Program-made: the position numbers and the translations under genes
In this document: positions 32,618 to 51,139 of the stretch, one piece after another
How positions within the stretch are numbered: the stretch's first letter is position 1
Layout of the letters: every line of letters starts with the position of its first letter
Notes under the pieces: generated by a model
The model's input: the letters and a program-made list of their open reading frames with translations, nothing else
Told to the model about the DNA's origin: nothing
Databases searched by the model: none
DNA from: Macrostomum lignano
Lineage: Eukaryota
Reading direction: 5' to 3'
Assembly: GCA_002269645.1 (NCBI GenBank)
Contig: NIVC01001894.1
Span: 1-64,000 of the forward strand
Length of the DNA: 64,000 nucleotides

Positions 32618-33344
32618 GCGAAAATGTACTTTTAGTCCCGAGAGCCAATTAGTCCGTTAAATCAGTTGATTAACTATTACACTGGGGAACTCTTAGCGAG
32701 CAAAGTCTCGACACCTCATCTAATCTTCCCTGTCCGCTTCTCAACATCTCAACTCTCGCTCCACCCCGCCCTACCTCTCCCCATCTCATCTCTCCTTTCA
32801 CTCTGACGTGACTTGCAGTCTTCCCTCTCTCCATCTGATCCCTACATGTAATTTATTATTCAGCGTGACTCGTTCCTTCTTATCCTTCTTAATGCATTAA
32901 TATAATTTACAGAAGTTCAACACAACCCGCTCAATACGAAATTGGCTCAATTATCAACTGTCGATAGTAGCCAAAACCCAGAGAAAAATGGAGCAAAAAA
33001 ATAATTCAAAAATTCCCTTCATAGAATTTTAATATCTCGGAAAAATTTTTCTCTCCATACTGCAAACTCACATTCTTGGCGGTACAGCAGAGGTTTCTAT
33101 AAAATATAGATTATATAGAAATCATGCAGAATCACGATTGCCGAGCTTATGATTCCAGTTGAATGTCAACCGGGGCTGTTTCACTGCGCGCCCAGCTCTG
33201 TATTCCTGCCTATTTTTTTATTAATCTACTCAATTTTCCCTGGGTGCCTTTGAGCAGTGGCTGAGGAAAAAGCTAATCAAGAAGGTTCTACGAGATTTGC
33301 CCACCTACGAGCTGCGTCTGAGTTTTTGCCGCACTGCCAAATAC

Positions 33345-33900
33345 AGACAGAGGCAGCCAGCTGCAGACAGAGGCGCCAGCTGCAGACAGAGGCGCCAGCT
33401 GTACAGACAGAGGCGCCAGCTGCAGACAGAGGCAGCCAGCTGCAGACAGAGGCGCCAGCTGCAGAGAGAGGCAGCCAGCTGCAGACAGAGGCGCCAGCTG
33501 TACAGAGAGAGACGCCAGCTAAAATTTAAGCCTGTACGCTCTGTACGCTCAGCTTCAACAAAACTACAATTCAATTTAGACTGTTCAAATTTTTAGTCAG
33601 GTTATTTTTAGACTTTCACTCCGGCAGTCAATCTAAACAAACTGCAGTCAATCTAAACAAACTGCAGTCAATCTAGACAAACTGCAGTCAATCTAGACAA
33701 ACTGCAGTCAATCTAAACAAACTGCAGTCAATCTAGACAAACTGCAGTCAATCTAAACAAACTGCAGTCAATCTAGACAAACTGCAGTCAATCTAAACAA
33801 ACTGCAGTCAATCTAGACAAACTGCAGTCAATCAAGACAAACTGCAGTCAATCTAAACAAACTGCAGTCAATCAAGACAAACTGCAGTTAATCAAGACAA
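33345..33900. repeat. 18-bp (CAGCTGCAGACAGAGGCGC-type) and 20-bp (AATCTAGACAAACTGCAGTC) arrays
   Basis: Tandem units. Confidence 0.92.
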
Positions 33901-34647: not shown

Positions 34648-35493
34648 AACAGAGGGGTTGCCTGCTACAGAGGGGTTGCCTGCTACAGAGGGGTTGCCTG
34701 CTACAGAAGGGGTTGCCTGCTACAGAGGGGTTGCCTGCTACAGAGGGGTTGCCTGCTACAGAGGGGTTGCCTGCTACAGAGGGGTTGCCTGCTACAGAGG
34801 GGTTGCCTGCTACAGAGGGGTTGCCTGCTACAGAGGGGTTGCCTGCTACAGAGGGGTTGCCTGCTACAGAGGGGTTGCCTGCTACAGAAGGGGTTGCCTG
34901 CTACAGAGGGGGTTTCCTGCTACAGAAGGGGTTGCCTGCTACAGAAGGGGTTTCCTGCTACAGAAGGGGTTGCCTGCTACAGAAGGGGTTGCCTGCTACA
35001 GAAGGAGTTTCCTGCTACAGAAGGGGTTGCCTGCTACAGAAGGGGTTTCCTGCTACAGAAGGGGTTTCCTGCTACAGAAGGGGTTGCCTGCTACAGAAGG
35101 GGTTTCCTGCTACAGAAGGGGTTGCCTGCTACAGAAGGGGTTGCCTGCTACAGAAGGGTTGTCTGCTACAGAGAGAGGCGTTAGCTGCAGAGAGAGGCCC
35201 CAGCTGCAGAGAGAGGCCCCAGCTGCAGAGAGAGGCCCCAGCTGCAGAGAGAGGCGCCAGCTGCAGAGAGAGGCGCCAGCTACAGAGAGAGGCGCCAGCT
35301 ACAGAGAGAGGCGCCAGCTACAGAGAGAGGCGCCAGCTACAGAGAGAGGCCCCAGCTGCAGAGAGAGGCCCCAGCTGCAGAGAGAGGCGCCAGCTGCAGA
35401 GAGAGGCGCCAGCTACAGAGAGAGGCGCCAGCTACAGAGAGAGGCGCCAGCTACAGAGAGAGGCGCCAACTGCAGAGAGAGGCCCCAGCTGCA
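34648..35493. repeat. 18-bp minisatellites CCTGCTACAGAGGGGTTG grading into CAGCTGCAGAGAGAGGCGC
   Basis: Tandem units. Confidence 0.95.
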
Positions 35494-35866
35494 GAAGTCC
35501 TTGCGGGTATAGAATCATAAAACCCCACGCGGGTAAAAATATTGATAGCACAGTTGCAAAAATCGGTGGCAACATTTTCTGTATAGCGAAACTGTTTTGG
35601 TTTAATTTAATGAAAAATCAGGACTGAAACTGCTCCAAGCTATTCTTAGCTTTTCAGAAGAAGAGCCTGATGGCATCCCATGCAGTCTACTATGCGCATG
35701 TTATATGTAAAGCATTTTAGCAGTGGTCGAACATTGATTTTAGTCTCTTTTTAAATAAGAGCAGCGCTCACATGTAGCTAGCCTGGATATGTAGCTCTTC
35801 TTCTCATTCCACCAGCTGTAAGAGTGATTAGAGTTAGGATGCTCTCTCCTAGTTCAGCTCCAGTCA

Positions 35867-37034
35867 CATGATGCTTTCGAATAGCTCACATGATGCTTTC
35901 GAATAGCTCAAATGATGCTTTCAAATAGCTCAAATGATGCTTTCGAATAGCTCAAATGATGCTTTCGAATAGCTCACATGATGCTTTCAAATAGCTCAAA
36001 TGATGCTTTCGAATAGCTCAAATGATGCTTTCGAATAGCTTAAATGATGCTTTCGAATAGCTCAAATGATGCTTTCAAATAGCTCAAATGATGCTTTCGA
36101 ATAGCTCCAATGATGCTTTCGAATAGCTCAAATGATGCTTTCGAATAGCTCAAATGATGCTTTCGAATAGCTCAAATGATGCTTTCGAATAGCTTAAATG
36201 ATGCTTTCGAATAGCTCACATGATGCTTTCGAATAGCTCAAATGATGCTTTCGAATAGCTTAAATGATGCTTTCGAATAGCTCAAATGATGCTTTCGAAT
36301 AGCTCAAATGATGCTTTCGAATAGCTCAAATGATGCTTTCGAATAGCTCAAATGATGCTTTCGAATAGCTCAAATGATGCTTTCGAATAGCTCAAATGAT
36401 GCTTTCGAATATCTCAAATGATGCTTTCGAATAGCTCAAATGATGCTTTCGAATAGCTCAAATGATGAATTTCGAATAGCTCAAATGATGATTTCGAATA
36501 ACACAAATGATGCTTTCGAATAACACAAATGATGCTTTCGAATAACACAAATGGTGATTTCGAATAACACAAATGATGATTTCGAATAACACAAATGATG
36601 ATTTCGAATAACACAAATGATGCTTTCGAATAACACAAATGATGATTTCGAATAACACAAATGATGATTTCGAATAACACAAATGATGCTTTCGAATAAC
36701 ACAGATGATGATTTCGAATAACACAGATGATGATTTCGAATAACACAGATGATGCTTTCGAATAACACAAATGATGCTATCGAATAACTCAAATGATGAT
36801 TTCGAATAACACAAATGATGATTTCGAATAACACAAATGATGATTTCGAATAACACAAATGATGCTTTCGAATAACACAAATGATGATTTCGAATAACAC
36901 AAATGATGATTTCGAATAACACAGATGATGCTTTCGAATAACACAAGTGATGATTTCGAATAACACAAATGATGATTTCGAATAACACAGATGATGCTTT
37001 CGAATAACACAAGTGATGATTTCGAATAACACAA
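35867..37034. repeat. 22-bp minisatellite TTTCGAATAGCTCAAATGATGC, switching to ..ATAACACA.. variant
   Basis: Tandem units. Confidence 0.97.
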
Positions 37035-37229
37035 ACTCGTGCTTTAATAAATACGAGCGTAAATCTAAAAGTGATTCAAGTAACTCAGGATGATGCGCGA
37101 GCTGACTTATTCTAAAATAGTCACATTATGTCACCGGATAAAGTAATAATGCCTCACCCACAATGTCTCATTTACAGACAGGGCTGGGCTGCAGATCGCA
37201 GGTACTACACATCCTACACAAAATCCTTA

Positions 37230-39576
37230 CTGATATTTCATTCGCATTTCCCAGCTGTACTGTTCCCATTCTCGGCAGTCTCTCGGACACGCAGCTTCAG
37301 TCAGCTACTCGTATATAATCGGCTGTCAAGCATTGGCCGCATCTGCAGAAGTGCTGCATCGAAGCATGTGTTATGCATGTGTATTTTTAGCGCCTACTGA
37401 TGCAGGAGACTCCCGTCCACAAGAGGGGGTGGTCCTTCCGACCGCGCTTCCTTCTTAGCTAATGGATTTCATAGCTGGAGCAATAGGAAATGTTTAGTTG
37501 ACTAAAAATTACTATTCTGAATTTTCTCAACTACAGTCAATTCAACAAGTGAAGTAAGAAGGACGCGATGTACTGAAAAACGGATACAAACAGCAGATGT
37601 TTGCAGACTTTGCTTAGTGAACTTGGTAAACTGGTGAACTTGCCAGAAGACTCTGGCAAAGGGAGAATTAGGCAGATAATTAGGGATTTTCGAGGCACCA
37701 GGGCAACGGAAGAATTAGGTTATTAGGGAATTTTGAGGCGACAAGACATGGGGAGAATTAGGTAATTAGGAATTTTCAAGGCGCCAAGGCATGGGGAGAA
37801 TTAGGTAATTAGGGATTTTCAAGGCGCCAAGGCAACGCGAGAATTAGGCAGGTAATTAGAAAACTTCGAGGTACAGAGGCAACGGGAGAATTTCGGTGAT
37901 TCTTTGAAATCAGTGGCAGCATGTAAAATCCCAATGACTGCGGCAGGAGTTAACAGGTGCCAACAACACTGTCATCCAGTTTATTTTTACTTCACAACAA
38001 TGGTCCTGGAGGATGTTCTCACTACTATTTCTAGCCTCTGTGCAGTAGGACCGTAAAACACCACCAAAAGGAAACCCGGGCAGTTGCATAAGGGAATTCC
38101 GGGACGTAATAGTCGCTATTGTTATCTATTTTAAGCTATTTGCGATATTGGCTTTTCCCCGGCAATCTTGCTCCAGCCGGAGCCAGATAATATAAATTGA
38201 AGCAGATTCGGGCAGAAAATTGTATAGCAAAATTGATTTAGAAAATCTGATTTGGTGAAATATTTGACAGCACGTATCAGCTGAGCAGTTTGCTGTAGGA
38301 TGCAGTTTTTCTGCTTAATCTCCCCTCTGCTGGCCCTCTGGATTTTCCCCGCTCCCATTCTCGCAGCGCCCCTCGGAGCCGGCGACCTCTTCAGGTCGTG
38401 CAGCGCCTCGGTGCCCGGCCTGTCGCAGGACAAGCTGGCATCGGGCCAGCAGATTTTCTCTCTGGCCCCACCGGCCGAGCTGCGAGGCGGCCCAGCAAGC
38501 GTGACCGAACCGCCTGTGGGCGACGGCGACTCTCCGTGCCCGTTCGCTCAGACGAAGAACTTCACCTTCGAGGGCAAGCCGTGCCTTGGCGGCGCTCCCT
38601 GCTTCACGGACCGGGTCTGCCTGTCCGCAGAACCGAAGTCTCTGGATGGGGACAGGTACCGCTGCAGCAAGGGCGTCCGGCTTGAGGAGTTCAGCCAGGT
38701 GGCTTTTGTGTACATTGGCTCATGTAACGGCTTGCACCTGTATGAGCGAGTGATAGTGCACCCACAGATGTGCGTACTGCTAACACTTGAGCATTGAATC
38801 TGTTTGTAATTACATGTATTCCTGCTGCATGTCCAGCTACATACTCAGGTGCTTTTCTACCCTGTCAATCAATGTTTTTGCAGTTACAGCACCTCGTTTT
38901 TATCCAAGCACTGAATAAGTACCATGTTTTTTTCTACTTTTACACTTGTTTTTGTAATGCTTTTCATAAATATGTAAATAAATTAAACGGATTTTCATCT
39001 GGTCTGGTCTGAGCCTGATTGGCCCAGAAATTCAATGAAAAAGATGAAACCTTAAGCTGAAGGCTTTAGCAAACATTTTCTAAGGAAAAATATTCATACA
39101 CAAGGGTATGCATGGATTTGTGTGCAGACATATAGTGGGCAATAGTTTATAGTCTAATAAACTGCATGGACTACTCACAGTTTAGCTGTCCATGTCAGCT
39201 AGCCTAGTATATCGCATGTACATGGAGAATCGTTGCGCACAGAAAACAGTCATCGCTTGCTCTTCAACATTGCCCTTATTGAGCAGTATAGTATCGATGC
39301 AGTCCCAGAGCAGGTTCTGCATTTACGCGACGTACACCACACACCTGCAGTTATGCACGCGGGAATGCCGCAAAAAGAACTCGCGACGTGTTTTCCGCGC
39401 GTTTCATGCATCTCAGATTCAGTTGCTGCATATGGAAGCAGAAAAAATGCATGGGAATTCCGTTTGCATTCTTTCGTTTCCGGTCATCCCAGATGTTGTG
39501 AAACTCGAAGAACGCTTTATTAAATGCTCGATATGAGGCCAGGTGCAAAGTTCAAAATGTTGCTATTTTACATGTA
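37230..39576 (+). repeat. Repeated module X, copy 1 (carries the 165-aa ORF; 3' end truncated at the Gypsy remnant)
   Basis: Aligns to 40951-44147 (inverted), 44296-48735 (direct) and 50517-51125 (inverted pieces). Confidence 0.85.
38300..38797 (+). CDS. Intronless 165-aa secreted Cys-rich protein, IL-17/cystine-knot-like (copy 1)
   Basis: ATG start, hydrophobic signal peptide ending ILA-AP, 8 Cys in the mature part, GC-rich island in AT-rich flanks; TATAAAT at 38191 and AATAAA at 38977. Confidence 0.7.
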   Translation: MQFFCLISPLLALWIFPAPILAAPLGAGDLFRSCSASVPGLSQDKLASGQQIFSLAPPAELRGGPASVTEPPVGDGDSPCPFAQTKNFTFEGKPCLGGAPCFTDRVCLSAEPKSLDGDRYRCSKGVRLEEFSQVAFVYIGSCNGLHLYERVIVHPQMCVLLTLEH

Positions 39577-40900
39577 CCGCACATGTACATGTACCGTTTG
39601 TGCCGCATGCTTCAGCGTTCGATTGAAGACTTCCACCTTGCCGTTTCGTCTTGGCTCATACAGTGGGACACATTCGTGTCGGATATCTCGTGAAGCGAGA
39701 AAGTCCTCCATTTCTCTGGAGACAAAGTTGCTTCCATTGTCAGATACCAAGGTATCAGGATTGCCGAAGCGATTGAAAACCTCTGTCAGCCAGTGGATCA
39801 GCCTTGGTGATCTCGTGTCTCCAGTGAGAAGGATCTCAGGATATGACGAGTAGTAATCAATGAGCGCGACAATTAATCGTTGATTTTGTGGAGCGATTGC
39901 AAACGGCACGGTGATGTCAATCGCGAGCTTTGACCAGGGTCGGTCAGGCTTTTCAACCGGTCCACCGTTTGTTACGATAATTTTTTTGCGACTTAGCACT
40001 GTCCTGGCATGGTAGACAGAACTTGACATAGTTCGTTATGGCGCTATCCATACCTTGCCACCAGTATGCCGATCGCAGAAGTCGTTTCATTCGTACGATT
40101 CCTGAGTGTCCTTCGTGGGCACGCTTCAGGATTGTCTTGACTAGGCTGCTGGGCGGCACGATTTGTTCACCACGGATCAAGATTCCGTTTTCTATCGTCA
40201 GTTCGTCTTGAATCTGTGCAAAGGCCTTGAGCTCTGTCTTCTTTTTATCAATTGTTCGGAAGCTTTGGACGGCCTTCATAACCTCCTGGATTATGGTATA
40301 CATGTATGTGCTCGTTAGCTTCTGCAGGTTTCTTGTAGAAGGGGTGTCAATATCGTTTGCAAGCAGAATGCTGCGGATAGTAGTGTCGTCTTCGTTATCC
40401 GCACTGTCCAGTCCATCGACGACTGGTAGTCTGGATAGGGCGTCAGCCACGTAGTTGGTGCTTCCGGGCTTGTAGACTATGTCGTAGTCGAATTCGGACA
40501 GCCGAACCTACCGACGTGTGAATTTTTCTGACTTCTTCTTGTTACTGTGATGTCGTAGGAGGCTCGTTAGTGCAGAATGATCTGTTTGTAAAATGAAAAG
40601 TCGTCCCAGCAAATATTTTGCAGTGTTCACATGCCCAGACGCAGGCAAGTGCTTCGCGCTCGTCCACAGCGTAGTTTTGTTCCCGCTCGGAAAGTGCATG
40701 GGATGCAAATGCTATTGGAACCTCGGTTTCGGCTTGTGTTTGTGAAAAAAACTGCACCGATGCCGACATCTGAAGCGTCGGTTGTTGTCAAAATCGTGGG
40801 CAGGTTAGGATCGAAAATGGCCCCTTCCAGACGTTCCTGAAGTATTCGTTTTACGCGGTCAAAGGCCGATTGTTGTTCACATCCCCAGATAAACTTCCGT
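39577..40900 (-). mobile_element. Ty3/Gypsy pol remnant (RT connection, RNase H, integrase), no LTRs
   Basis: TDASDVGIGAV, IAFASHALSEREQNYA..EREALACVW, YKPG..VADALSRLP, HEGHSGIVRMK..YWW, VSDNGSNF; multiple frameshifts. Confidence 0.9.
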
Positions 40901-41914
40901 TTATCTTTTCTTTTGTTTGTTTCTTTTGTTTGTTTATCTTTTGTTAAACATATAGCATGCACGCCCAGGGACTACTGACAGAATTTAGTAGTCCCTGTGT
41001 GTACGCCTATACATATTACAGTAGATACAAAATGTACATCCATCAGCCGCTTATAAATTAGATAATCCCTAAGCTTCGTATAGTCTCGTGGTCGCAAAAA
41101 GGCTCAGACTGAAGAGACACCTGCTTCGTGGGCTGCATGCCATGCATCCAGTGTACTGGTACTTCTCCGGTAAAGGACGGTAAAAGGGCATCCGATATAA
41201 AAATTGATATACATGTAAAGTAGCAACATTTTGAACTTTGCACCTGGCCTCATTTCGAGCATTTATTAAAGCGTTCTTCGAGTTTCACAACATCTGGGAT
41301 GACCGGAAACGAAAGAATGCAAACGGAATTCCCATGCATTTTTTCTGCTTCCATATTCAGCAACTGAATCTGAGATGCATGAAACGCGCGGAAAACACGT
41401 CGTCGCGAATTCTTTTTGCGGCATTCCCGCGTGCATATCTGCAGGTGTGTGGTGTACGTCACGTAAATGCAGAACCTGCTCTGGGACTGCATTAAAACTA
41501 TATAGTACAATCCAGCCGTGTAGAAAAGCAAGCAATGACTGTTTTGTGTGCGCAACGATTCTCCATGTAAATGCGATATACTGGGCTAGCTGACCCATGC
41601 ATGCATACCCTTGTGTATGAATATTTTTCCTTAGAAAATGTTTGTAAAAGCCTTCAGCTTAAGGTTTCATATTTTTCATTGAATTTCTGGGCCAATCAGG
41701 CTCAGATCAGACCAAATGAAAATCCGTTTAATTTATTTACATATTTATGAAAAGCATTACAAAAACAAGTGTAAAAGTAGAAAAAACCATTGTATATTCA
41801 GTGCTTGGATAAAAACGAGGTGCTGTAACTGCAAAAACATTGATTGACAGGGTAGAAAAGCACCTGAGTATGTAGCTGGACATGCAGCAGGAATACATGT
41901 AATTACAAACAGAT

Positions 41915-42412
41915 TCAATGCTCAAGTGTTAGCAGTACGCACATCTGTGGGTGCACTATCACTCGCTCATACAGGTGCAAGCCGTTACATGAGCCAATGT
42001 ACACAAAAGCCACCTGGCTGAACTCCTCAAGCCGGACGCCCTTGCTGCAGCGGTACCTGTCCCCATCCAGAGACTTCGGTTCTGCGGACAGGCAGACCCG
42101 GTCCGTGAAGCAGGGAGCGCCGCCAAGGCACGGCTTGCCCTCGAAGGTGAAGTTCTTCGTCTGAGCGAACGGGCACGGAGAGTCGCCGTCGCCCACAGGC
42201 GGTTCGGTCACGCTTGCTGGGCCGCCTCGCAGCTCGGCCGGTGGGGCCAGAGAGAAAATCTGCTGGCCCGATGCCAGCTTGTCCTGCGACAGGCCGGGCA
42301 CCGAGGCGCTGCACGACCTGAAGAGGTCGCCGGCTCCGAGGGGCGCTGCGAGAATGGGAGCGGGGAAAATCCAGAGGGCCAGCAGAGGGGAGATTAAGCA
42401 GAAAAACTGCAT
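41915..42412 (-). CDS. Same 165-aa secreted protein (copy 2, identical protein)
   Basis: Translation identical to copy 1. Confidence 0.7.
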   Translation of the reverse strand: MQFFCLISPLLALWIFPAPILAAPLGAGDLFRSCSASVPGLSQDKLASGQQIFSLAPPAELRGGPASVTEPPVGDGDSPCPFAQTKNFTFEGKPCLGGAPCFTDRVCLSAEPKSLDGDRYRCSKGVRLEEFSQVAFVYIGSCNGLHLYERVIVHPQMCVLLTLEH

Positions 42413-42756
42413 CCTACAGCAAACTGCTCAGCTGATACGTGCTGTCAAATATTTCACCAAATCAGATTTTCTAAATCAATTTTGCTATACAATTTTCTGC
42501 CCGAATCTGCTTCAATTTATATTATCTGGCTCCGGCTGGAGCAAGATTGCCGGGGAAAAGCCAACATCGCAAATAGCTTAAAATAGATAACAATAGCGAC
42601 TATTACGTCCCGGAATTCCCTTATGCAACTGCCCGGGTTTCCTTTTGGTGGTGTTTTACGGTCCTACTGCACAGAGGCTAGAAATAGTAGTGAGAACATC
42701 CTCCAGGACCATTGTTGTGAAGTAAAAATAAACTGGATGACAGTGTTGTTGGCACC

Positions 42757-43907
42757 AGGGAGGGCTGAGGGACAGCGCTTCTGGATTGTCTTCAGGTAGT
42801 GCAGTTCACCAAAGTCGAGCGGTGCTGGGTCCTGATCCACGCTTTGATGCGCGAGTCGATGACACAGCCAGAAATCGGGACAAGAGGTTCGGGACCGAGA
42901 GAGGAGCCGGAGGCGCCAACTTTTGCAAGGGCGTCAGCCAACTCATTTCCTTGGATCCCCACATGCCTCGGAACCCACTTAAGGGTGATTTTGTTGGTAG
43001 AGCCCAACATGTTGAGGAGTTTGATACAGTCGAGGACTGTAGCAGAGTTGGTGCTGCAGCCACTGATGGTGTGCAAGGCAGCTTGGCTGTCCGAATGGAA
43101 AATGATGTTCTTACCGGTTACGCCAGTGGCGAGAAGCTCTGCAGTGCAGGAGCTGATGGCCAGAACTTCATTTTGGAAAACACTGGAGTTGACCCCAGTG
43201 TACTGAGCGTGGGTTGCGATGACCCTCTCGTTCAGGAAGATTCCAACATCAAAACCGGTGTTGGCTGACTGCTTAGAACCGTCGGTGTAGCAATGAAGCT
43301 CACCAGGGTTCCAGTGGTCATTGATGGTATCGCGCGAGTCGATAGCTACGGAGTAGCGCTGTCTCAGGTTGAGCGTTGAAGCAATGCCATCGGTGAAGAC
43401 ACGATTGGCCTGACACTCGTTGAGAATGTTGAGACACAGGTCGCTATGCGGGACGAGGTTCCGCTTAGCAGGTGCCCTCATGTAAAGGAATTTGACACCG
43501 GCATCAAGTAAACGCCGCGTCGTTCTAGCCGCCTTACCCCTGACGAAGAGGTCGAGAGGCGGTAGATTAAGGAAGGCCCCATGCCGGCAAATTGCGTGGA
43601 CCTGGTGGCGTTGCAGATAAGCCTACACGCTCTGCCCTGGATCGTGTTGAGCAAATCTGCATGGCTTTTGACCTGGGTAGCGCTAACTCAGACAACCGAG
43701 GCCTACGTAATGGCAGGTCAAACTACGGAAGTGTAGGTCCACCAAAGCCGCTTTGGGGAAAGACCCCAAGAAGTGCCAAGTACTCGTCGGAGCTGGGTGA
43801 GGATGGCTGAGGCACGCTTGGCTTTTGCTTTCACGTGAAAGGACCAGTTGAGCCGGTGGTCAAGTATGACCCCGAGACATCTGGCCTGGTGCGCGAAAGC
43901 AATATCT
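42757..43907 (-). mobile_element. LOA-like non-LTR fragment (RT C-terminus and RNase H), truncated at both ends
   Basis: CYTDGSK..SVFQNEVLAI..FHSDSQAAL..LKWVPRHVGIQGNELAD; homologous to 45841-48051. Confidence 0.85.
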
Positions 43908-44143
43908 CAGAGTCTTCTGGCAAGTTCACCAGTTTACCAAGTTCACTAAGCAAAGTCTGCAAACATCTGCTGTTTGTATCCGTTTTTTCAGTACATCGCG
44001 TCCTTCTTACTTCACTTGTTGAATTGACTGTAGTTGAGAAAATACAGAATAGTAATTTTTAGTCAACTAAACATTTCCTATTGCTCCAGCTATGAAATCC
44101 ATTAGCTAAGAAGGAAGCGCGGTCGGAAGGACCACCCTCCTTG

Positions 44144-44225
44144 AGGGCTAGCCGAATGGGCGACCCTCGCCTCCCTGCTGTGTCTACGGACCCACCCTGC
44201 AGCTAAGTCAAGTAAGTAAGTCAAG
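44144..44225 (+). mobile_element. Isolated LOA-like 3' terminus and tail
   Basis: Colinear with 47972-48051, including CTGCAGCTAAGTCAAG repeats. Confidence 0.8.
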
Positions 44226-44886
44226 GGGTTTCCGCTACAGACAGAGGCCCCAGCTGCAGAATGAGGCGCCAGCTGCAGAGAGAGGCGCCAGGAAATCCCT
44301 ATTAGGTAATTAGGGATTTTCGAGGCGACAGGGCAACGGGAGAATTATATAATTAGGAATTTTCGAAGCGCCAAGGCATGGGGAGAATTAGGTAATTAGG
44401 GATTTTCAAGGCGCCAAGGCAACGCGAGAATTAGGCAGGTAATTAGGAAACTTCGAGGTACAGAGGCAACGGGAGAATTTAGGTGATTCTTGGGAATCAG
44501 TAGCAGCATGTAAAATCCCAATGAATGCGGCAGGAGTTAACAGGAGCCAACAACACTGCCATCCAGTTTATTTTTACTTCACAACAGTGGCCCTGGAGGA
44601 TTTTCTCACTACTATTTCTAGCCTCTGTGCAGTAGGACCGTAAAACACCACCAAAAGGAAACCCGGGCAGTTGCATAAGGGAATTCCGGGACGTAATAGT
44701 CGCTATTGTTATCTATTTTAAGCTATTTGCGATGTTGGCTTTTCCCCGGCAATCTTGCTCGAGCCGGAGCCAGATAATATAAATTGAAGCAGATTCGGGC
44801 AGAAAATTGTATAGCAAAATTGATTTAGAAAATCTGATTTGGTGAAATATTTGACAGCACGTATCAGCTGAGCAGTTTGCTGTAGG

Positions 44887-45384
44887 ATGCAGTTTTTCTG
44901 CTTAATCTCCACTCTGCTGGCCCTCTGGATTTTCCCCGCTCCCATTCTCGCAGCGCCCCTCGGAGCCGGCGATCTCTTCAGGTCGTGCAGCGCCTCGGTG
45001 CCCGGCCTGTCGCAGGACAAGCTGGCATCGGGCCAGCAGATTTTCTCTCTGGCCCCACCGGCCGAGCTGCGAGGCGGCCCAGCAAGCGTGACCGAACCGC
45101 CTGTGGGCGACGGCGACTCTCCGTGCCCGTTCGCTCAGACGAAGAACTTCACCTTCGAGGGCAAGCCGTGCCTTGGCGGCGCTCCCTGCTTCACGGACCG
45201 GGTCTGCCTGTCCGCAGAACCGAAGTCTCTGGATGGGGACAGGTACCGCTGCAGCAAGGGCGTCCGGCTTGAGGAGTTCAGCCAGGTGGCTTTTGTGTAC
45301 ATTGGCTCATGTAACGGCTTGCACCTGTATGAGCGAGTGATAGTGCACCCACAGATGTGCGTCCTGCTAACACTTGAGCATTGA
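44887..45384 (+). CDS. Same 165-aa secreted protein (copy 3, P9T)
   Basis: One amino-acid change and at least two silent changes (GAC/GAT, GTA/GTC) relative to copy 1. Confidence 0.7.
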   Translation: MQFFCLISTLLALWIFPAPILAAPLGAGDLFRSCSASVPGLSQDKLASGQQIFSLAPPAELRGGPASVTEPPVGDGDSPCPFAQTKNFTFEGKPCLGGAPCFTDRVCLSAEPKSLDGDRYRCSKGVRLEEFSQVAFVYIGSCNGLHLYERVIVHPQMCVLLTLEH

Positions 45385-45840
45385 ATCTGTTTGTAATACA
45401 TGTATTCCTGCTGCATGTCCAGCTACATACTCAGGTGCTTTTCTACCCTGTCAATCAATGTTTTTGCAGTTACAGAAACTCTTTTTTTATCCAAGCACTG
45501 AATAAGTACCATGGTTTTTTCTACTTTCAAACTTGTTTTTGTAATGCTTTTCATAAATATGTAAATAAATTAAGCGGATTTTCATCAGGTCTGGTCTGAG
45601 CCTGATTGGCCCAGAAATTCAATGAAAAAAATGAAACCTTAAGCTGGAGGTTTTATTTAACATTTTCTAAGTAAAATATTCATACACAAGGGTATGCATG
45701 GATTTGTGTGCAGACATATAGTTGGTTGGCAATAGCCCCGTTTATAGTCTAATAAACTACATGGACTACTACTGTTTAGCTGTCCATGTCAGCTAGCCCA
45801 GTATATCGCATATGCATGGTGAATCGTTGCGCACGTTAGA

Positions 45841-48051
45841 GAGACTGGTGCTCTGGCGCCTACTCTCTGTGGAACTGAAGAACAAGCCGCTCAGTGAGAA
45901 CCAGCACGCCTTTCGGGCAGGCAGGTCCACGGAGAGCGCGCCACACGTTTTGGTTGACATGCTGGAGAAAGCCGTTCTTGATAATGGCTACGCTCTCGCT
46001 GTCTTCCTCGACATTGTTGGAGCCTTCGATAATGTCCTCTTTGAGGCTTTTGACAGAGCTCTACGTGCTAGAGGAACCCACTCGCACCTCACCCGGTGGA
46101 TCATGTATATGATCAGCCACCGTACTGCCACCGCACACCTGTTGGGCCACCAACGGACGGTAACCGTCTGCAAAGGCAGCCCCCAGGGCGGTGTCCTCTT
46201 TCCAGTTCTCTGGAACATGGTCATCGATGAGCTCCTCCAGGACAGCCATCTTGACCCCATCCTCAAGGTCGGTTACGCCGATGATGTCACAGCCGTGGCA
46301 TCCGGACAGTCACCTGAAACCCTTAGGGATCTTCTGCAAAACTTTATTTGCTCTGCTGAACGATGGGCGGACAGGTGCGGCCTCAGGCTCTCTGAGACGC
46401 GATCATGTTCACCAGCAGGGTAAACTGGCGTATTCGCCCACAAAGCTTTACGGGGTGGAAATTCCATCCTGTAAGCAAAACAAGTGTCTCGGCGTTACGC
46501 TGGACCACCGGCTGAGCTGGTCCACCCACGTCCAGGCCAAAACCAAAAAAGCCCTCGCGATTCTTGCGCAGCTGCGCAGAGCCGTCGGCACCACCTGGGG
46601 CCTCACCCCAAAACGGCTCTGGTGGATCTACACCGCAATGCTCCGACCGGCCGTTACCTACGCCGGCCTGGTCTGGACCAGCGCCTTGCAGATTAAAACC
46701 TGCTACGAAGCCCTCAAAAAGGTGCAGGGACGCGCGTGCCGCATGATCCTGAATGCCCCGCTCTCTGCTCCCTTTGACGGCCTCAACGCCTTTCTTTGCC
46801 TCCCGCCTCTGGACATCTTTGTCCGTCGCGAGGCTGCTAAAACCACCCGCCGGCTCATCGAGGCTGGCGTTAGCTTCAAGCCACAAAGAGCGATGGCGAA
46901 GCGCAAGCTCCTGCCGCACTCTGACCTGTGCCTTAAAGTTCTGGAGGAGAGTGGGAGTGCGGCTGTCCTTTCGGACGCTGAGCCGCGCTCCCTCAGTCTC
47001 TACCAACGCTTCAAGGTCACTATCCCCTCCAGGGAGAACGCCAACGACAGCTGGGCCCCTCAGGAGGTTTACTGCTTTACTGACGGATCCTCCAAAGACG
47101 GTTTATCCTTACCAACGGCCGCGTGATTGCTACTCACGCCCAACACACTGGCAGACTCTCCAGCGTCTTCCAGAATGAAGTCCTTGCCATCAGCTCCTGT
47201 GCAGCTGAGCTCCACTGCAGGGACTTCAAGGACAGAAGAATCTTCTTCCACTCTGACAGCCAGGCCGCTTTACAGGCCCTGTGTCACATCACTACGAATT
47301 CCCGAACAGTCCGCGACTGTATCGGACAGCTTAACAAGCTGGCTCGGAGGAACACCGTCCGGCTCACGTGGATCCCAGGACACGCCGGCTTCAAAGGTAA
47401 CGAGCTCGCCGACTCCCTCGCTAAGGCGGGCTCTTCCGGCTCGCCCCTTGGCCCCGTGCCCCTGGCCCCCATCCCCGCCACAGTCATTAATCGTCAGATT
47501 AACGACTGGGCGGATATCCTGCACTTGCGCAGATGGGATGGTATCTCCAACTGCCGCCAATCTCGTGCGGCAGTGCCCAATCCATCCCTAAAGCTGCGGA
47601 GAATCCTTTTGAACCAAAATCGAAAAGATATCCGCGCTCTCACTATGACCTTCACAGGTCACGGTTGCCTTGCCAGGCACTGTTTCCTCCGAAGTGCCCG
47701 CCGGAGCGAACTCTGCCCTTTCTGCAACCCCGAGAACGAAGACGCCAAGCACTTCGTCTGCTACTGCTCGGCCTTCAACCGAGACCGGCTCAACTACCTC
47801 GGGCCCAACCCGTCCCTGGTCGACGTTTGCTGGCCTGAGAACATCCCACGGCTCATCCGGTTCCTCCGGGCCACCAAGCGAGCCTCCGTCTTCTCTACCG
47901 AAGACAACGCTGCAGACAGGACCGGCAGACCTCCCTGACCGGCCCCGCGCCCTAGCCTATGCGGGTCTTTCAGGGATTAGCGGAATGGGCGACGCTCGCC
48001 TCCCCGCTGCGTCTTCGGACCGCCTGCAGCTAAGTCAAGTCAAGTAAGTCA
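45841..48051 (+). mobile_element. 5'-truncated LOA-like non-LTR retrotransposon (RT, RNase H, C-terminal CCHC), (TAAGTCAAG)n tail, 80-bp flanking duplication
   Basis: NQHAFRAGRSTE, FLDIVGAFD, GSPQGG, YADDV, CFTDGS, TGHGCLARH..CPFC..H..C; flanked by 45761-45840 = 48052-48131. Confidence 0.88.
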
Positions 48052-48959
48052 ATGGACTACTACTGTTTAGCTGTTCATGTCAGCTAGCCCAGTATATCGC
48101 ATATGCATGGTGAATCGTTGCGCACGTTAGACACAATTAAAACAGTGCATTGCTTGCTCTTCAACATTGCCCTTATTGAGCAGTATAGTATCGATGCAGT
48201 CCCAGAGCAGGTTCTGCATTTACGTGACGTACACCACACACCTGCAGTTATGCACGCGGGAATGCCGCAAAAAGAATTCGCGACGTGTTTTCCGCGCGTT
48301 TCATGCATCTCAGATTCAGTTGCTGAATATGGAAGCAGAAAAAATGCATGGGAATTCCGTTTGCATTCTTTCGTTTCCGGTCATCCCAGATGTTGTGAAA
48401 CTTGAAGAACGCTTTATTAAATGCTCGAAATGAGGCCAGGTGCAAAGTTCAAAATGTTGCTATTTTACATGTATATCAATTTTTATATCGGATGCCCTTT
48501 TACCGTCCTTTACCGGAGAAGTACCAGTATACTGGATGCATGGCATGCAGCCCACGAAGCAGGTGTCTCTGCAGTCTGAGCCTTTTTGCGACCACGAGAC
48601 TATTCGAAGCTTAGGGATTATCGAATTTATAAGTGGCTGATGGATGTACATTTTGTATCTACTGTAATATGTATAGGCGTACACACAGGGACTACTAAAT
48701 TATGTCAGTAGTCCCTGGGCGTGCATGCTGTATACAGTACTCGTATGTACATGCAGATAATATTGCCAAGGACTACTAAAGTTTCTAACTACCCCTAAAT
48801 ATGTATAGCATACATGTAGTAGATAGTAGGGACATTATAATTGCATCACTGTATACCAGGTAAAGGTAGCGAAGAAATATAAAACTTATAATGAATGAAG
48901 TTTCTTGCAGTTTTGACAACGAGAAAACGAAACGTACATCATTTATAGACGTATGTATA

Positions 48960-49954: not shown

Positions 49955-50516
49955 ATAGCCCTGTTCCCCCCGTCCCCATCTTTCGACGGTCATCAATCGT
50001 CAGATCGATGACTGGGCTGACTCCCATGACAGGGACAGATGGGCGGGCACCCAAAACTGCCGGCAATCTCGTGCCGCGGTTCCGTGCCCCTCTCGCAGGC
50101 TCAGGAACGTCTTTCTGAACCAAACTCGGAAGGATATTTGAGCCCTTGCCATGACCTTTGCCGGCCATGGCTACCTCGCCAAGCACTGCTTCATCCGAGG
50201 CGACCTCGAGAGTGAGCTTTGCCCCTTTTGCGAGTACGACAATGAAGTTGCTCAGCACTTTGTCACTTCCCTTTCTTTACCAGAGACCGGCTACGCTACC
50301 TCGGGCCTAACCCGTCCATTGACGAGGTCTGCCAGCCCGACAGCATCCCACGGCTCATCCGGCCCCTCCGGGCGACAAGACGAGCCAATTTTTCCCCACG
50401 GAAGATCACGCTGCAGGACGGACCGGCGGACCACCCTGACCCGGCGGACCGCCTCTCTCTGCAGCTGGGGTCTCTGCATGTAGCTGGTGCCTCTGCCTGT
50501 CTGCGGGCCTTCAGGG
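49955..50516 (+). mobile_element. LOA-like 3' body fragment lacking its last ~80 nt
   Basis: MTFAGHGYLAKHCF..CPFC; ends at CTTCAGGG. Confidence 0.8.
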
Positions 50517-51139
50517 ACGGGAGTCTCCTGCATCAGTAGGCGCTAAAAATACACATGCATAACACATGTGTGTTTCCATGCAGCACTTCTGCAGATGCGG
50601 CCAGTGCTTGACAGTCTATTATATAGCTGACTCAAGCTGCGTGTCTGTGAGAGACTGCCGAGAATGGGAACAGTGCAGCTGGGAAATGCGAATGAAATAT
50701 CAGAAAGGATTTTGTTATTACGTGTATAGTCCCTGTGTTCGCCTATACATATTACAGTAGATACAAAATGTACATCCATCAGCCACTTATAAATGCAATA
50801 AATGCGATCCCAAAACTTCGAAAAGTCTCGTACGTGGTCGCAAAAAGGCTCAGACTGCAGAGACACCAGTTGTTTCGTGGGTTGCATGCCATGCATCCAG
50901 TGTACTGGTACTTCTCCGGTAAAGGACGGTAAAAGTGCATCCGATATAAAAAATGATATAAAATAGCAACATTTTGAACTTCGCATCTGGCCTCATTATG
51001 TCTGCACATGTCTGCCAACTTTATGTCAGCACACATATGTATACATACCCTTGTGTATGAATATTTTTCCTTAAAAAACATTTGTAAAGGCCTTCAGCTT
51101 AAGGTTTCCTTTTTCCATTGAATTTCAATATATCATTAG

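What the first reader, a model, noticed from the sequence alone, without database searches (positions are those of the whole stretch)
38300..45384. Three near-identical copies of an intronless secreted IL-17/cystine-knot-like protein
Seen: 165 aa, signal peptide, Cys at 34, 80, 95, 101, 107, 122, 142 and 158. The segment S-P-C-P-F-x4-N-x6-P-x4-A-x-C-x5-C parallels IL-17 family S-x-(S/C)-P-W-x4-N-x6-P-x5-A-x-C-x4-C, and SCNGLHLYERVIVHPQMCV parallels [20 protein letters not shown], but the terminal CxC has only one Cys. The ORF is intact in all three copies (1 replacement, at least 2 silent changes) while flanks carry indels and TE insertions. Inference: a functional, recently amplified divergent cytokine or growth factor (IL-17/PTTH/Trunk/Spaetzle-like fold) moving as cargo.
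Basis: partly seen in the sequence, partly recalled or inferred. Interest (0 to 1): 0.75.

Follow-up and report, generated by a model that had tools for sequence, protein, structure and literature searches.

The report
Orphan secreted 8-cysteine gene, inverted triplication
Three almost identical intronless copies of a small secreted, cysteine-rich protein gene sit head-to-head and tail-to-tail in a transposon-rich stretch; the gene belongs to a near-orphan family with one known distant relative, it fails every IL-17 membership test, and its cysteine spacing only hints at a cytokine-like cystine-knot fold.

Summary
Three intact 165-codon ORFs lie at 38300-38797 (+), 41915-42412 (-) and 44887-45384 (+). 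Copies 1 and 2 are identical; copy 3 has one replacement (P9T) and two silent changes.

- **Real gene:** An exhaustive search of 1.84 billion proteins found one true homolog, a 171-aa intronless ORF on a brackish-mat metagenome contig (30% identity). It has its own signal peptide, all 8 mature cysteines and the GKPCLGGxPC motif.
- **Not cargo:** The copies form a + - + inverted triplication. A sharply bounded core (promoter, ORF, proximal 3'UTR) is 99-100% identical while the outer arms differ by 3-6%. That indicates gene conversion, so ORF intactness among the copies does not prove selection.
- **IL-17 membership not met:** Pfam, PDB sequences, HMM and hhalign (probability 0.1-0.7%) all gave nothing. 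Structure models were too poor to use (pLDDT 35-43).
- **Weak fold hint:** In global alignment to invertebrate IL-17 domains, 6 of 8 conserved Cys columns receive a Cys. The scores are z = 2.2-3.7 (window protein) and 1.5-2.6 (homolog). Genuine IL-17s score 11.6-14.5, NGF 2.5-4.2 and unrelated Cys-rich controls 0-1.3.

The fold and the source organism remain unresolved.

The parts
38300..38797 (+). Copy 1 ORF, 165 aa: signal peptide about residues 1-22, mature chain 143 aa with 8 Cys, NFT sequon at residue 87
41915..42412 (-). Copy 2 ORF, identical in DNA to copy 1
44887..45384 (+). Copy 3 ORF, P9T plus two silent changes
37956..38880 (+). Homogenised core of copy 1 (344 bp upstream, ORF, 83 bp of 3'UTR). 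Its equivalents are about 41832-42756 (-) and about 44543-45467 (+). It has 1/925 substitutions against copy 2 and 10/924 against copy 3.
38191..38196 (+). TATAAA, 104 nt upstream of the ATG; putative core promoter (inferred). A is at -3 of the ATG, and an in-frame stop lies just upstream.
   Evidence: read from the sequence; stop-to-stop ORF starts at 38285
38977..38982 (+). AATAAA, 180 nt after the stop; putative poly(A) signal (inferred). No poly(A) tract follows, so this is not a recent retrocopy.
38881..39576 (+). Outer, more divergent part of the duplicated arm (3'UTR end, segment D at 39027-39141, repeat X at 39166-39576). It is 92-96% identical to the other copies.
39577..40949 (-). 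Centre of the copy 1 / copy 2 palindrome: a fragment of a Gypsy-type LTR retrotransposon pol (RNase H, integrase zinc-binding and core domains)
42757..43907 (-). Non-LTR retrotransposon fragment (RNase H) abutting the upstream edge of copy 2
43908..44143 (-). Segment A, the reverse complement of 37420-37655 (98%). It is the upstream flank of copy 2 and marks the head-to-head junction with copy 3.
37655..37848 (.). 43-bp minisatellite upstream of copy 1. The same array lies upstream of copy 3 at 44307-44479.
45840..48051 (+). 5'-truncated non-LTR retrotransposon (RT and RNase H) with an (AAGTC)n-like tail, inserted after copy 3. It is flanked by a target duplication of about 79 bp (45761-45839 and 48052-48130). 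Copy 1 has the empty site at about 39164-39240.
50515..51126 (-). Gene-less relic in which segments that flank the gene (D, part of X, U = 37194-37418) are contiguous at about 87% identity. It is probably an old junction between tandem units.

Best explanation
This is a genuine, unannotated, intronless gene family encoding a secreted protein of about 15 kDa (mature chain 143 aa, 8 cysteines, so probably 4 disulfides). The protein has an N-terminal segment with one Cys, a Pro/Gly/Ala-rich linker, and a C-terminal Cys-rich, beta-rich domain of about 85 aa.

The family is nearly orphan. The only relatives found are one 30%-identical homolog from an unidentified brackish-water eukaryote and one chimeric gene model containing a further near-identical copy.

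In this window the gene was amplified by local segmental duplication into a + - + inverted triplication. Copy 1 lies tail-to-tail with copy 2, and copy 2 lies head-to-head with copy 3. A tract of about 0.9 kb covering the promoter, ORF and proximal 3'UTR has since been homogenised by gene conversion, while the outer arms diverged and received TE insertions.

Shown: the ORFs, their differences, the architecture, the conversion-like identity profile, the conserved homolog, and the failure of all IL-17 family tests.

Inferred: secretion, the TATA and poly(A) signals, and function as an extracellular disulfide-stabilised ligand or effector. The fold is unresolved. Its cysteine skeleton is compatible with an incomplete cystine knot of the invertebrate IL-17 T1 type (C80-C122 as disulfide 1/4, C101 or C107 to C158 as one ring disulfide, C34-C142 as the extra pair), but this is only a hypothesis.
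For: Three intact ORFs and their exact differences.

Coding character: GC3 75% against GC2 49%, in flanks of 37-43% GC.

Homolog: exhaustive phmmer over 1.84 billion representatives found P0002 at E = 1.5e-11. Its full ORF (L001 374-889, 171 aa) begins with a signal peptide. It keeps all 8 mature Cys, four of them at identical precursor positions (80, 95, 101, 107), and the invariant GKPCLGGxPC motif. Global alignment of the two gives z = 14.6. L001 and the window share no DNA similarity except a microsatellite, so conservation acts on the protein.

P0001 carries residues 20-153 with a T69I difference, which means a further copy or allele. The part of the ORF it splices out (AFVxIGxCxGL) is conserved in P0002, so the single-exon model is the right one.

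Architecture: inverted arms of 962 nt at 100% and 855 nt at 99%; segment map.

Conversion-like profile: core 1/925 and 10/924 substitutions against 8/235 and 15/236 just downstream, p = 1.9e-5 and 1.3e-5.

Later TE insertion with a target duplication of about 79 bp.
Against: There is no expression evidence. The L001 contig comes from a DNA co-assembly, not from RNA (PMC8605020).

The source organism is unknown, and none of the window's ORFs is on record in public assemblies.

The family has only two divergent members, so purifying selection cannot be quantified.

Within the window, 1 replacement against 2 silent changes is too few to test.

The sharply bounded identity could in principle reflect a second, more recent duplication of a sub-segment and not gene conversion.

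The function is inferred from general features only.
Confidence: 0.62

Rival explanations
1. The family is a true but extremely divergent branch of the IL-17 / cystine-knot growth-factor superfamily. It would resemble the invertebrate T1B/T1C types, retaining disulfide 1/4 and one ring disulfide, and would act as a dimeric cytokine through an IL-17R-like or other receptor.
For: Invertebrate IL-17s have Cys where chordates have Ser in the 'SPW' motif, and CPF and CPY variants exist (PMC4517768). Here the motif is SPCPF / SPCPY.

Counted from that Cys, the oyster IL-17 has P at +14 and Cys at +22, +27, +41, +57 and +75/+77. The window protein has P at +14 and Cys at +21, +27, +42, +62 and +78 (my count from the sequences).

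Global PSSM alignment puts the family's own Cys on 6 of 8 conserved IL-17 Cys columns, the same columns in both members. The scores are z = 3.5/3.8 (p about 0.002) and 2.0/1.9 (p about 0.035), stable across gap penalties.

hhalign (local and global) and the pairwise global alignment choose the same register; HMMER's local matches do not.

Loss of one ring disulfide is known in IL-17 types T1B and T1C (PMC11087794).

IL-17A and IL-17F chains appeared 4 times in the top 50 of an otherwise non-significant Foldseek search.
Against: There is no Pfam IL17 hit even at E <= 10 for either member or for the isolated domain.

The family profile against PDB sequences gave nothing.

hhalign probabilities are 0.7%, 0.15%, 0.5% and 0.1%.

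Unfiltered HMM scores equal those of shuffles for both the mammalian and the invertebrate IL-17 models.

Every genuine IL-17, including leave-one-out nematode and Daphnia members and single-terminal-Cys members, scores z = 11.6-14.5 with positive raw scores. This family scores like NGF (z = 2.5-4.2) with negative raw scores.

The IL-17 invariants W, D, R-x-P, E-A-x-C and V-G-C are absent.

Cys-on-Cys matching of at least 6 occurs in about 6% of shuffles.

The Foldseek hint did not recur with the second model.

The hypothesis was chosen after looking at the sequence.
Confidence: 0.25
2. The gene is cargo of a mobile element (a captured gene in a non-autonomous LTR element, Helitron or Pack-type transposon, or a 3' transduction), and the three copies arose by transposition.
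For: The region is saturated with TEs. Segments that flank the gene (D, X, U) occur contiguously without the gene at 50515-51126, which could be read as a repeat element bracketing the gene. Repeat X recurs at 48052-48733 and 40950-41594.
Against: All three copies lie within 7 kb in a + - + order and share long flanks, which is the pattern of segmental inverted duplication and not of dispersal.

No terminal inverted or long terminal repeats, target-site duplications or poly(A) tails delimit the unit.

The clear TE insertion has its own target duplication of about 79 bp and is absent from copies 1 and 2, so it came after the duplication.

The homolog on L001 shares no flanking DNA with the window.

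No relative was found in viral contigs.
Confidence: 0.08
3. The ORF is not a functional gene. It would be a fortuitous open frame in a GC-rich repeat, kept open only because the copies are young or homogenised.
For: It is not annotated as such in public protein sets. The only public model containing it is a chimeric 871-aa prediction with no Pfam domain. Identity among the copies is explained by gene conversion and not by selection. There are no expression data.
Against: A 30%-identical ORF of the same length, with a signal peptide and all 8 Cys, exists in another organism with no DNA similarity (tblastn E = 7e-16). That is not expected for a non-coding repeat. The codon-position GC pattern is typical of coding sequence. 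The start context, TATA and AATAAA are in the expected places.
Confidence: 0.05

Closest known systems
Invertebrate IL-17 ligands (Pfam PF06083; knot types T1A/T1B/T1C of PMC11087794; sequences in PMC4517768 S1 Dataset)
   Same: Both are small secreted proteins with a C-terminal Cys-rich beta domain. Both have a [ST]-x-C-P-[WYF] motif with Pro 14 residues later, and Cys at similar spacings (+21/22, +27, +41/42, about +57-62, about +75-78). Some members also have a single terminal Cys in place of CxC. Both families tend to occur as local multi-copy clusters. Some invertebrate IL-17 genes are also intronless.
   Different: There is no detectable sequence or profile similarity (Pfam, HMM, hhalign). 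The conserved W, D-x-x-R-x-P, E-A-x-C, V-x-V-L-R-R and V-G-C motifs are lacking. An extra Cys (C95) sits inside an invariant GKPCLGGxPC motif that IL-17s do not have. The global skeleton score is far below even the most divergent true IL-17s (z about 2-4 against 11.6-14.5).
Other cystine-knot growth factors (NGF/neurotrophins, Spaetzle, Trunk/PTTH, Noggin, PDGF/VEGF, TGF-beta)
   Same: Both are secreted, disulfide-rich and probably beta-rich. The family scores against the IL-17 profile about as NGF does, which is the level of a shared-fold relationship.
   Different: There is no C-x-C and no C-x-G-x-C in either member, so the canonical eight-or-more-membered ring with a threading disulfide cannot form in the usual way. 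No Pfam hit to any of these families at E <= 10.
Palindromic / ampliconic gene arrays kept identical by arm-to-arm gene conversion, and inverted triplications of the DUP-TRP/INV-DUP type (own knowledge)
   Same: There are inverted near-identical arms with a unique spacer (962 nt at 100%, 2.9-kb spacer). Identity is much higher in a bounded tract than in the rest of the arm. The middle copy is inverted relative to the two outer copies.
   Different: The scale is tiny (arms of about 1.6 kb, whole structure about 8 kb) compared with the kilobase-to-megabase palindromes of sex chromosomes. The chromosomal context is unknown. The mechanism is inferred from one haplotype only.

Membership tests
IL-17 family (PF06083) | Match to the curated family HMM at or above the gathering score | tested here: not met
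   No Pfam family at E <= 10 for the window protein, its C-terminal domain, the L001 homolog or P0001. HMMER's filters may hide very weak matches, so unfiltered HMMs were also run. Scores were -2.1, -1.2, 0.3 and -0.3 bits, equal to shuffles.
IL-17 family (PF06083) | Profile-profile similarity to IL-17 alignments | tested here: not met
   hhalign probability was 0.7% against human IL-17A, 0.15% against 22 mammalian IL-17A/F/IL-25 sequences, and 0.5% (local) and 0.1% (global) against 28 invertebrate IL-17 domains.
IL-17 family (PF06083) | Conserved residues: S/C-P-W, D-x-x-R-x-P, A-x-C ... C, N-S/C, V..R, E, C-x-C-V (invariants of alignment A5) | tested here: not met
Only C-P-aromatic, the Pro at +14 and the Cys positions have counterparts. 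W, D, R, N and the V-G-C context are absent.
IL-17 family (PF06083) | Cysteine skeleton of the knot (Cys 1-6, plus the extra conserved Cys) | tested here: inconclusive
   6 of 8 conserved Cys columns are matched in both members, against about 6% of shuffles reaching 6. Global z is 2.2-3.7 and 1.5-2.6. True IL-17s score 11.6-14.5, NGF 2.5-4.2, VEGF 0.5-1.5, RNase A about 1 and lysozyme about 0. One of Cys 5/6 is missing, as in the known types T1B and T1C (PMC11087794).
IL-17 family (PF06083) | Cystine-knot three-dimensional fold, dimer | tested here: inconclusive
   AlphaFold2 models had pLDDT 42.8 and 35.2. Foldseek against PDB gave no hit with E < 2.5. IL-17A/F appeared at ranks 7, 9, 34 and 41 for model 1 only. 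Dimerisation is not testable here.
IL-17 family (PF06083) | Binding to an IL-17 receptor (double FN3 plus SEFIR) | not testable with these tools
   The source genome is unknown and no receptor is in the window.
Canonical growth-factor cystine knot (NGF, TGF-beta, PDGF, Spaetzle, Trunk, Noggin) | Six knot cysteines including a C-x-C (and, in many families, C-x-G-x-C) forming the ring | tested here: not met
   Neither member contains C-x-C or C-x-G-x-C. There are no Pfam hits to these families.
Secreted protein (classical signal peptide) | N-terminal uncharged hydrophobic core followed by small residues at -3/-1, with no other membrane segment | tested here: met
   The hydrophobic core is residues 5-16 in both members (Kyte-Doolittle 2.3 and 2.7). 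Candidate cleavage sites are ILA|AP and VIC|RS. The highest hydrophobicity outside the N-terminus is at most 1.1. No dedicated predictor was available, so the cleavage site is inferred.
Palindrome / inverted amplicon homogenised by gene conversion | Inverted arms whose identity is far higher in a bounded tract than in adjacent arm sequence | tested here: met
   Arms of 962 nt at 100% and 855 nt at 99%. Core against adjacent arm: 1/925 against 8/235 and 10/924 against 15/236 substitutions, p about 1e-5.
TE-borne cargo gene / retrocopy | The unit is bounded by TE termini (TIR or LTR) with target-site duplications, or by a poly(A) tail with a TSD; copies are dispersed | tested here: not met
   No such termini were found. 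No poly(A) tract follows the AATAAA. The copies are clustered in + - + order. The only clean TSD belongs to a non-LTR element inserted beside copy 3.

The most novel reading that the evidence does not exclude
The family is a previously unrecognised, extremely divergent lineage of the IL-17 / cystine-knot cytokine superfamily. It would keep the ancestral threading disulfide (C80-C122) and one ring disulfide, and would have gained a new cysteine pair around an invariant GKPCLGGxPC loop. It is invisible to Pfam and HMM-HMM searches, present in at least two aquatic eukaryotes, and maintained here as a gene-converting inverted triplet.
Probability: 0.22. Interest if true: 0.6.

Novelty: new variant of a known kind. 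Interest (0 to 1): 0.36.

Why it matters
If the gene is expressed, it adds an unannotated, lineage-restricted secreted protein family that current annotation either misses or mis-models. The only public model is a chimeric 871-aa prediction. If the cysteine-skeleton hint holds up, the family would extend the known range of incomplete cystine knots in IL-17-like cytokines beyond what sequence searches can detect. That bears on how this cytokine superfamily diversified in invertebrates. The small + - + amplicon, with its sharply bounded identity tract, is also a compact example of gene conversion keeping gene copies identical inside decaying, TE-invaded flanks. It cautions against reading 'intact ORF, decayed flanks' as proof of selection.

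Tried and rejected
- **Large protein database:** The word-indexed search of 5.8 billion proteins found nothing with the single protein. The family profile returned only P0002.
- **Metagenome scans:** Neither the tool-chosen peptide patterns nor a degenerate GKPCLGGxPC DNA pattern found a relative. The 8 pattern hits were chance matches, for example L005, which is out of frame inside a bacterial gene.
- **Viral contigs:** No relative was found, so there is no support for a viral origin.
- **P0003:** This third hit of the exhaustive search is a repetitive prokaryote-like protein and was judged spurious.
- **Structure prediction:** The full mature chain and the Cys-rich domain alone both gave unusable models (pLDDT 42.8 and 35.2). 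The Foldseek results are therefore not evidence either way. The recurrence of IL-17A/F in the first list did not replicate.
- **hmmalign:** I intended it as a global test, but it aligned only locally. I replaced it with my own global PSSM alignment.
- **L001 as expression evidence:** Rejected. The paper shows the co-assembly is of metagenomic DNA.
- **Source organism:** Exact look-ups of four window ORFs, Rfam and a tRNA scan gave nothing. The TE content (Gypsy, non-LTR with RNase H, Penelope-like RT plus GIY-YIG) suggests an animal genome, but this is not proven.
- **Retrocopy origin:** Rejected. There is no poly(A) tract, and the homolog is also intronless.
- **Fold-back assembly artefact:** Rejected. 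The arms have a 2.9-kb asymmetric spacer, and their outer parts differ by 3-8%.

Full report
**1. The observation**

ORF listing shows three 165-codon ATG-initiated ORFs at 38300-38797 (+), 41915-42412 (-) and 44887-45384 (+). Copies 1 and 2 are identical in DNA. Copy 3 differs at three bases: nt 25 (P9T, inside the signal peptide), nt 87 (silent) and nt 477 (silent).

Cys lie at 34, 80, 95, 101, 107, 122, 142 and 158, with one more at position 5 in the signal peptide. A family HMM run over all six frames of the window finds only these three copies and no decayed relic.

The ORF is 62% GC, with GC3 at 75% and GC2 at 49%. Its flanks are 37-43% GC. A TATAAA lies at 38191-38196, A is at -3 of the ATG, an in-frame stop lies just upstream (the stop-to-stop frame begins at 38285), and an AATAAA lies at 38977-38982 with no poly(A) tract after it.

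**2. Is it a real gene?**

Pfam, PDB sequences and the 5.8-billion-protein index gave nothing. The exhaustive phmmer scan of 1.84 billion representatives gave three hits.

- **P0001** is an 871-aa UniParc entry with no Pfam domain. It contains residues 20-153 of the ORF, with T69I, between what look like a predicted splice acceptor (ctcgcag|CG at 38366) and donor (CAG|GTGGCT at 38698). The rest of it does not map to the window. It is a chimeric gene model built on a further copy or allele.
- **P0002** is a genuine homolog (E = 1.5e-11), discussed below.
- **P0003** is a repetitive protein and was judged spurious.

P0002 lies on a 1073-bp contig (L001) of IMG sample 3300040801. That sample is the DNA co-assembly of 30 metagenomes from brackish microbial mats of the Etang de Berre, France (PMC8605020). 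It therefore comes from some unidentified benthic eukaryote and is not expression evidence.

The full ORF on L001 is 171 aa and starts MQCSILSAFLFVLMVSDVIC, which is a signal peptide. It is 30% identical to the window protein and keeps all eight mature Cys, four of them at identical precursor positions. It also keeps the invariant block GKPCLGGxPC and the motifs SPCP[FY] and AFVxIGxCxGL. The last motif lies in the part that P0001 splices out, so the single-exon model is the correct one.

The two loci share no DNA similarity apart from a microsatellite, while the proteins align with z = 14.6. Conservation therefore acts on the protein, and this is the real evidence for function.

Both precursors have one N-terminal hydrophobic core (residues 5-16) and no other membrane-like segment. 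The mature chains are 143 and 151 aa (15-17 kDa) with 8 Cys each. N-glycosylation sequons are present in both but are not conserved in position.

**3. Architecture and the 'cargo' idea**

Self-alignment gives this map.

- **Copy 1 unit:** U (37194-37418), segment A (37420-37655), a 43-bp minisatellite (37655-37848), promoter, ORF, 3'UTR, D (39027-39141), repeat X (39166-39576).
- **Copy 2:** the same unit inverted, forming a palindrome with copy 1 (arms 37956-39576 and 42756-41210). The 1.4-kb centre (39577-40949) is a fragment of Gypsy-type pol (RNase H and integrase).
- **Upstream of copy 2:** a non-LTR fragment (42757-43907), then segment A inverted (43908-44143). Copy 2 therefore lies head-to-head with copy 3, and the junction falls in satellite repeats.
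- **Copy 3 (44301-45834):** colinear with copy 1. It is followed by a 5'-truncated non-LTR element (45840-48051; RT and RNase H) that ends in an (AAGTC)n-like tail. That element is bracketed by a duplication of about 79 bp (45761-45839 and 48052-48130). Repeat X then resumes. Copy 1 shows the empty site.

This is a + - + inverted triplication with later TE insertions. No TIR, LTR, TSD or poly(A) tail bounds the gene unit.

A gene-less relic at 50515-51126 has D, part of X and U contiguous at about 87% identity. It is best read as an old junction between tandem units. 'Moving as cargo' is not supported.

**4. Selection or conversion?**

The identity profile is sharply stepped.

| Region | Copy 1 vs copy 2 | Copy 1 vs copy 3 |
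|---|---|---|
| Core 37956-38880 (344 bp upstream, ORF, 83 bp of 3'UTR) | 1/925 substitutions | 10/924 substitutions |
| Next 237 bp (38881-39117) | 8/235 substitutions | 15/236 substitutions |
| Fisher p, core vs next | 1.9e-5 | 1.3e-5 |

Further out, the arms are 92-94% identical.

Non-coding upstream sequence and synonymous sites are as uniform as replacement sites. The uniformity therefore reflects gene conversion, or a nested recent re-duplication, and not purifying selection on the ORF. The 1:2 ratio of replacement to silent changes is too small a sample to test.

**5. The IL-17 / cystine-knot claim**

*Membership tests.*
- Pfam gave nothing for either member or for the isolated domain at E <= 10.
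- The family profile against PDB sequences gave nothing at E <= 10.
This retrieved database IL-17A/F/IL-25 entries, all annotated PF06083.
- hhalign of the family against IL-17A gave a probability of 0.7%. Against a 22-sequence mammalian alignment it gave 0.15%.
- An unfiltered HMM scored the two members at -2.1 and -1.2 bits, the same as their shuffles.
The control IL-25 against IL-17A scores z = 8.7.

*The literature then changed the question.* Invertebrate IL-17s keep the third knot disulfide. Its two Cys sit where chordates have Ser, so the motif is C-P-W and not S-P-W (PMC4517768). IL-17 knots come in five types: T1A, T1B, T1C, T2 and T3. T1B and T1C have each lost one ring disulfide (PMC11087794). 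A single terminal Cys is therefore not disqualifying, and SPCPF / SPCPY looks more like the invertebrate motif. CPF and CPY variants occur in pearl-oyster and oyster IL-17s.

*Tests against invertebrate IL-17s.* I built a 28-sequence invertebrate IL-17 domain alignment from that paper's S1 Dataset.
- Unfiltered local HMM scores were again at shuffle level, 0.3 and -0.3 bits.
- hhalign probabilities were 0.5% (local) and 0.1% (global).
- hhalign (local and global) and the pairwise global alignment nevertheless chose one register: C80, C101, C107, C122, C142 and C158 fall on conserved Cys columns and P94 on the conserved Pro. HMMER's local matches did not follow it.
- A global PSSM alignment gave the window domain z = 3.5 with free shuffles and 3.8 with the end cysteines fixed (p about 0.002). 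The homolog scored 2.0 and 1.9 (p about 0.035). Both match 6 of 8 Cys columns, which about 6% of shuffles also reach.

*Calibration of that test.*

| Sequence scored against the invertebrate IL-17 profile | z |
|---|---|
| Genuine IL-17s (human IL-17A, IL-25; leave-one-out C. elegans, Daphnia, single-terminal-Cys oyster members); raw scores positive | 11.6-14.5 |
| NGF (shares the fold, not the family) | 2.5-4.2 |
| Window protein | 2.2-3.7 |
| L001 homolog | 1.5-2.6 |
| VEGF-A | 0.5-1.5 |
| RNase A | about 1 |
| Lysozyme | about 0 |

The z values for the genuine IL-17s are against free shuffles. With the end cysteines fixed they are 6.6-12.8. The ranges for NGF, the window protein, the homolog and VEGF-A come from the gap-penalty sweep (free shuffles).

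The family is therefore not an IL-17 family member by any sequence criterion. Its skeleton resembles the IL-17 knot about as much as NGF's does. That is a fold-level hint of marginal significance, for a hypothesis chosen after inspection.

*Structure prediction could not decide.* With a two-sequence alignment, AlphaFold2 gave pLDDT 42.8 (mature chain) and 35.2 (Cys-rich domain). Foldseek against PDB gave no hit better than E = 2.5.

**6. Most likely mechanism**

Shown:
- A conserved intronless gene for a signal-peptide-bearing, 8-Cys protein.
- A + - + local amplification.
- A conversion-like identity tract.
- Later TE insertions.

Inferred:
- The protein is secreted and folds into a disulfide-stabilised domain (4 disulfides). 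Both models predict a C-terminal beta-hairpin region, at low confidence.
- It acts outside the cell as a ligand or effector.
- Three identical copies probably raise dosage.

If the knot reading is right, the pairing would be C80-C122 (disulfide 1/4), one of C101/C107 to C158, the other to the family-specific C95, and C34-C142 (like the N-terminal to 'fifth' Cys link of IL-17A). I put about 0.62 on the conservative statement and about 0.25 on true cystine-knot or IL-17-superfamily ancestry.

**7. Novelty**

The family has no Pfam model, no solved relative, no named homolog, and only two divergent members among about 15 billion predicted proteins. Orphan secreted Cys-rich families are common in eukaryotic genomes, and nothing here is mechanistically unprecedented. 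The interest lies in the possible deep link to IL-17-like knots and in the neat conversion-maintained inverted triplet.

**8. Limits**

The source organism is unknown, there are no expression data, and the alignment is too shallow for structure prediction or selection tests.

Noticed in passing
window 34649-37035: Three long satellite arrays lie directly upstream of the amplicon: a 19-bp unit x28 (34649-35172), a different 19-bp unit x17 (35165-35495) and a 22-bp unit x53 (35864-37035), each 95-96% internally identical. They produce long spurious ORFs. Three copies of the second 19-bp unit recur at 44234-44291, and related copies at 50444-50510 and about 33340-33490.
   Followed up: partly
window 60037-61218 (+): A 393-aa ORF has reverse-transcriptase and GIY-YIG endonuclease domains, which is the signature of a Penelope-like retroelement. 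It suggests an animal-type genome but does not identify it.
   Followed up: no
window 45840-48051, with 45761-45839 and 48052-48130: A 5'-truncated non-LTR retrotransposon (RT and RNase H) has an (AAGTC)n-like 3' tail and an unusually long target-site duplication of about 79 bp with one mismatch. A 70%-identical relative of its 3' part lies at 49958-50441.
   Followed up: partly
P0001 (UniParc UPI0007A270A0), matches window 38366-38698 and equivalents: The only public protein containing this ORF is an 871-aa fragmentary gene model. It has no Pfam domain, lacks the signal peptide and the conserved C-terminus, and joins the ORF core to unrelated low-complexity sequence. It looks like an annotation artefact built on a fourth copy or allele (T69I).
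   Followed up: partly
window 38131-38433 (-), 38398-38685 (+) and equivalents in copies 2 and 3: ORFs of 95-100 aa overlap the gene in other frames and on the opposite strand. They are most simply by-products of the GC-rich coding sequence. No homologs were sought.
   Followed up: no
window 27468-31603 (+): A run of long ORFs includes a reverse-transcriptase domain (29141-30208) and a 465-codon open frame (30209-31603). It is probably a largely intact non-LTR retrotransposon.
   Followed up: no
window 13434-15544 (-): Several overlapping long ORFs (up to 443 codons) in a 50-56% GC stretch have only weak Pfam hits below or near threshold (OCRE, DUF7440) and poly-Q/low-complexity sequence. Their nature is unclear.
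   Followed up: no
L001 1-60 and 1048-1073; window about 4026-4107: The homolog's contig starts in a degenerate tcagaggtcagatg-type repeat and ends in a (GAGT)n microsatellite. The same microsatellite occurs in the window near 4.0-4.1 kb. It is the only DNA the two loci share.
   Followed up: no
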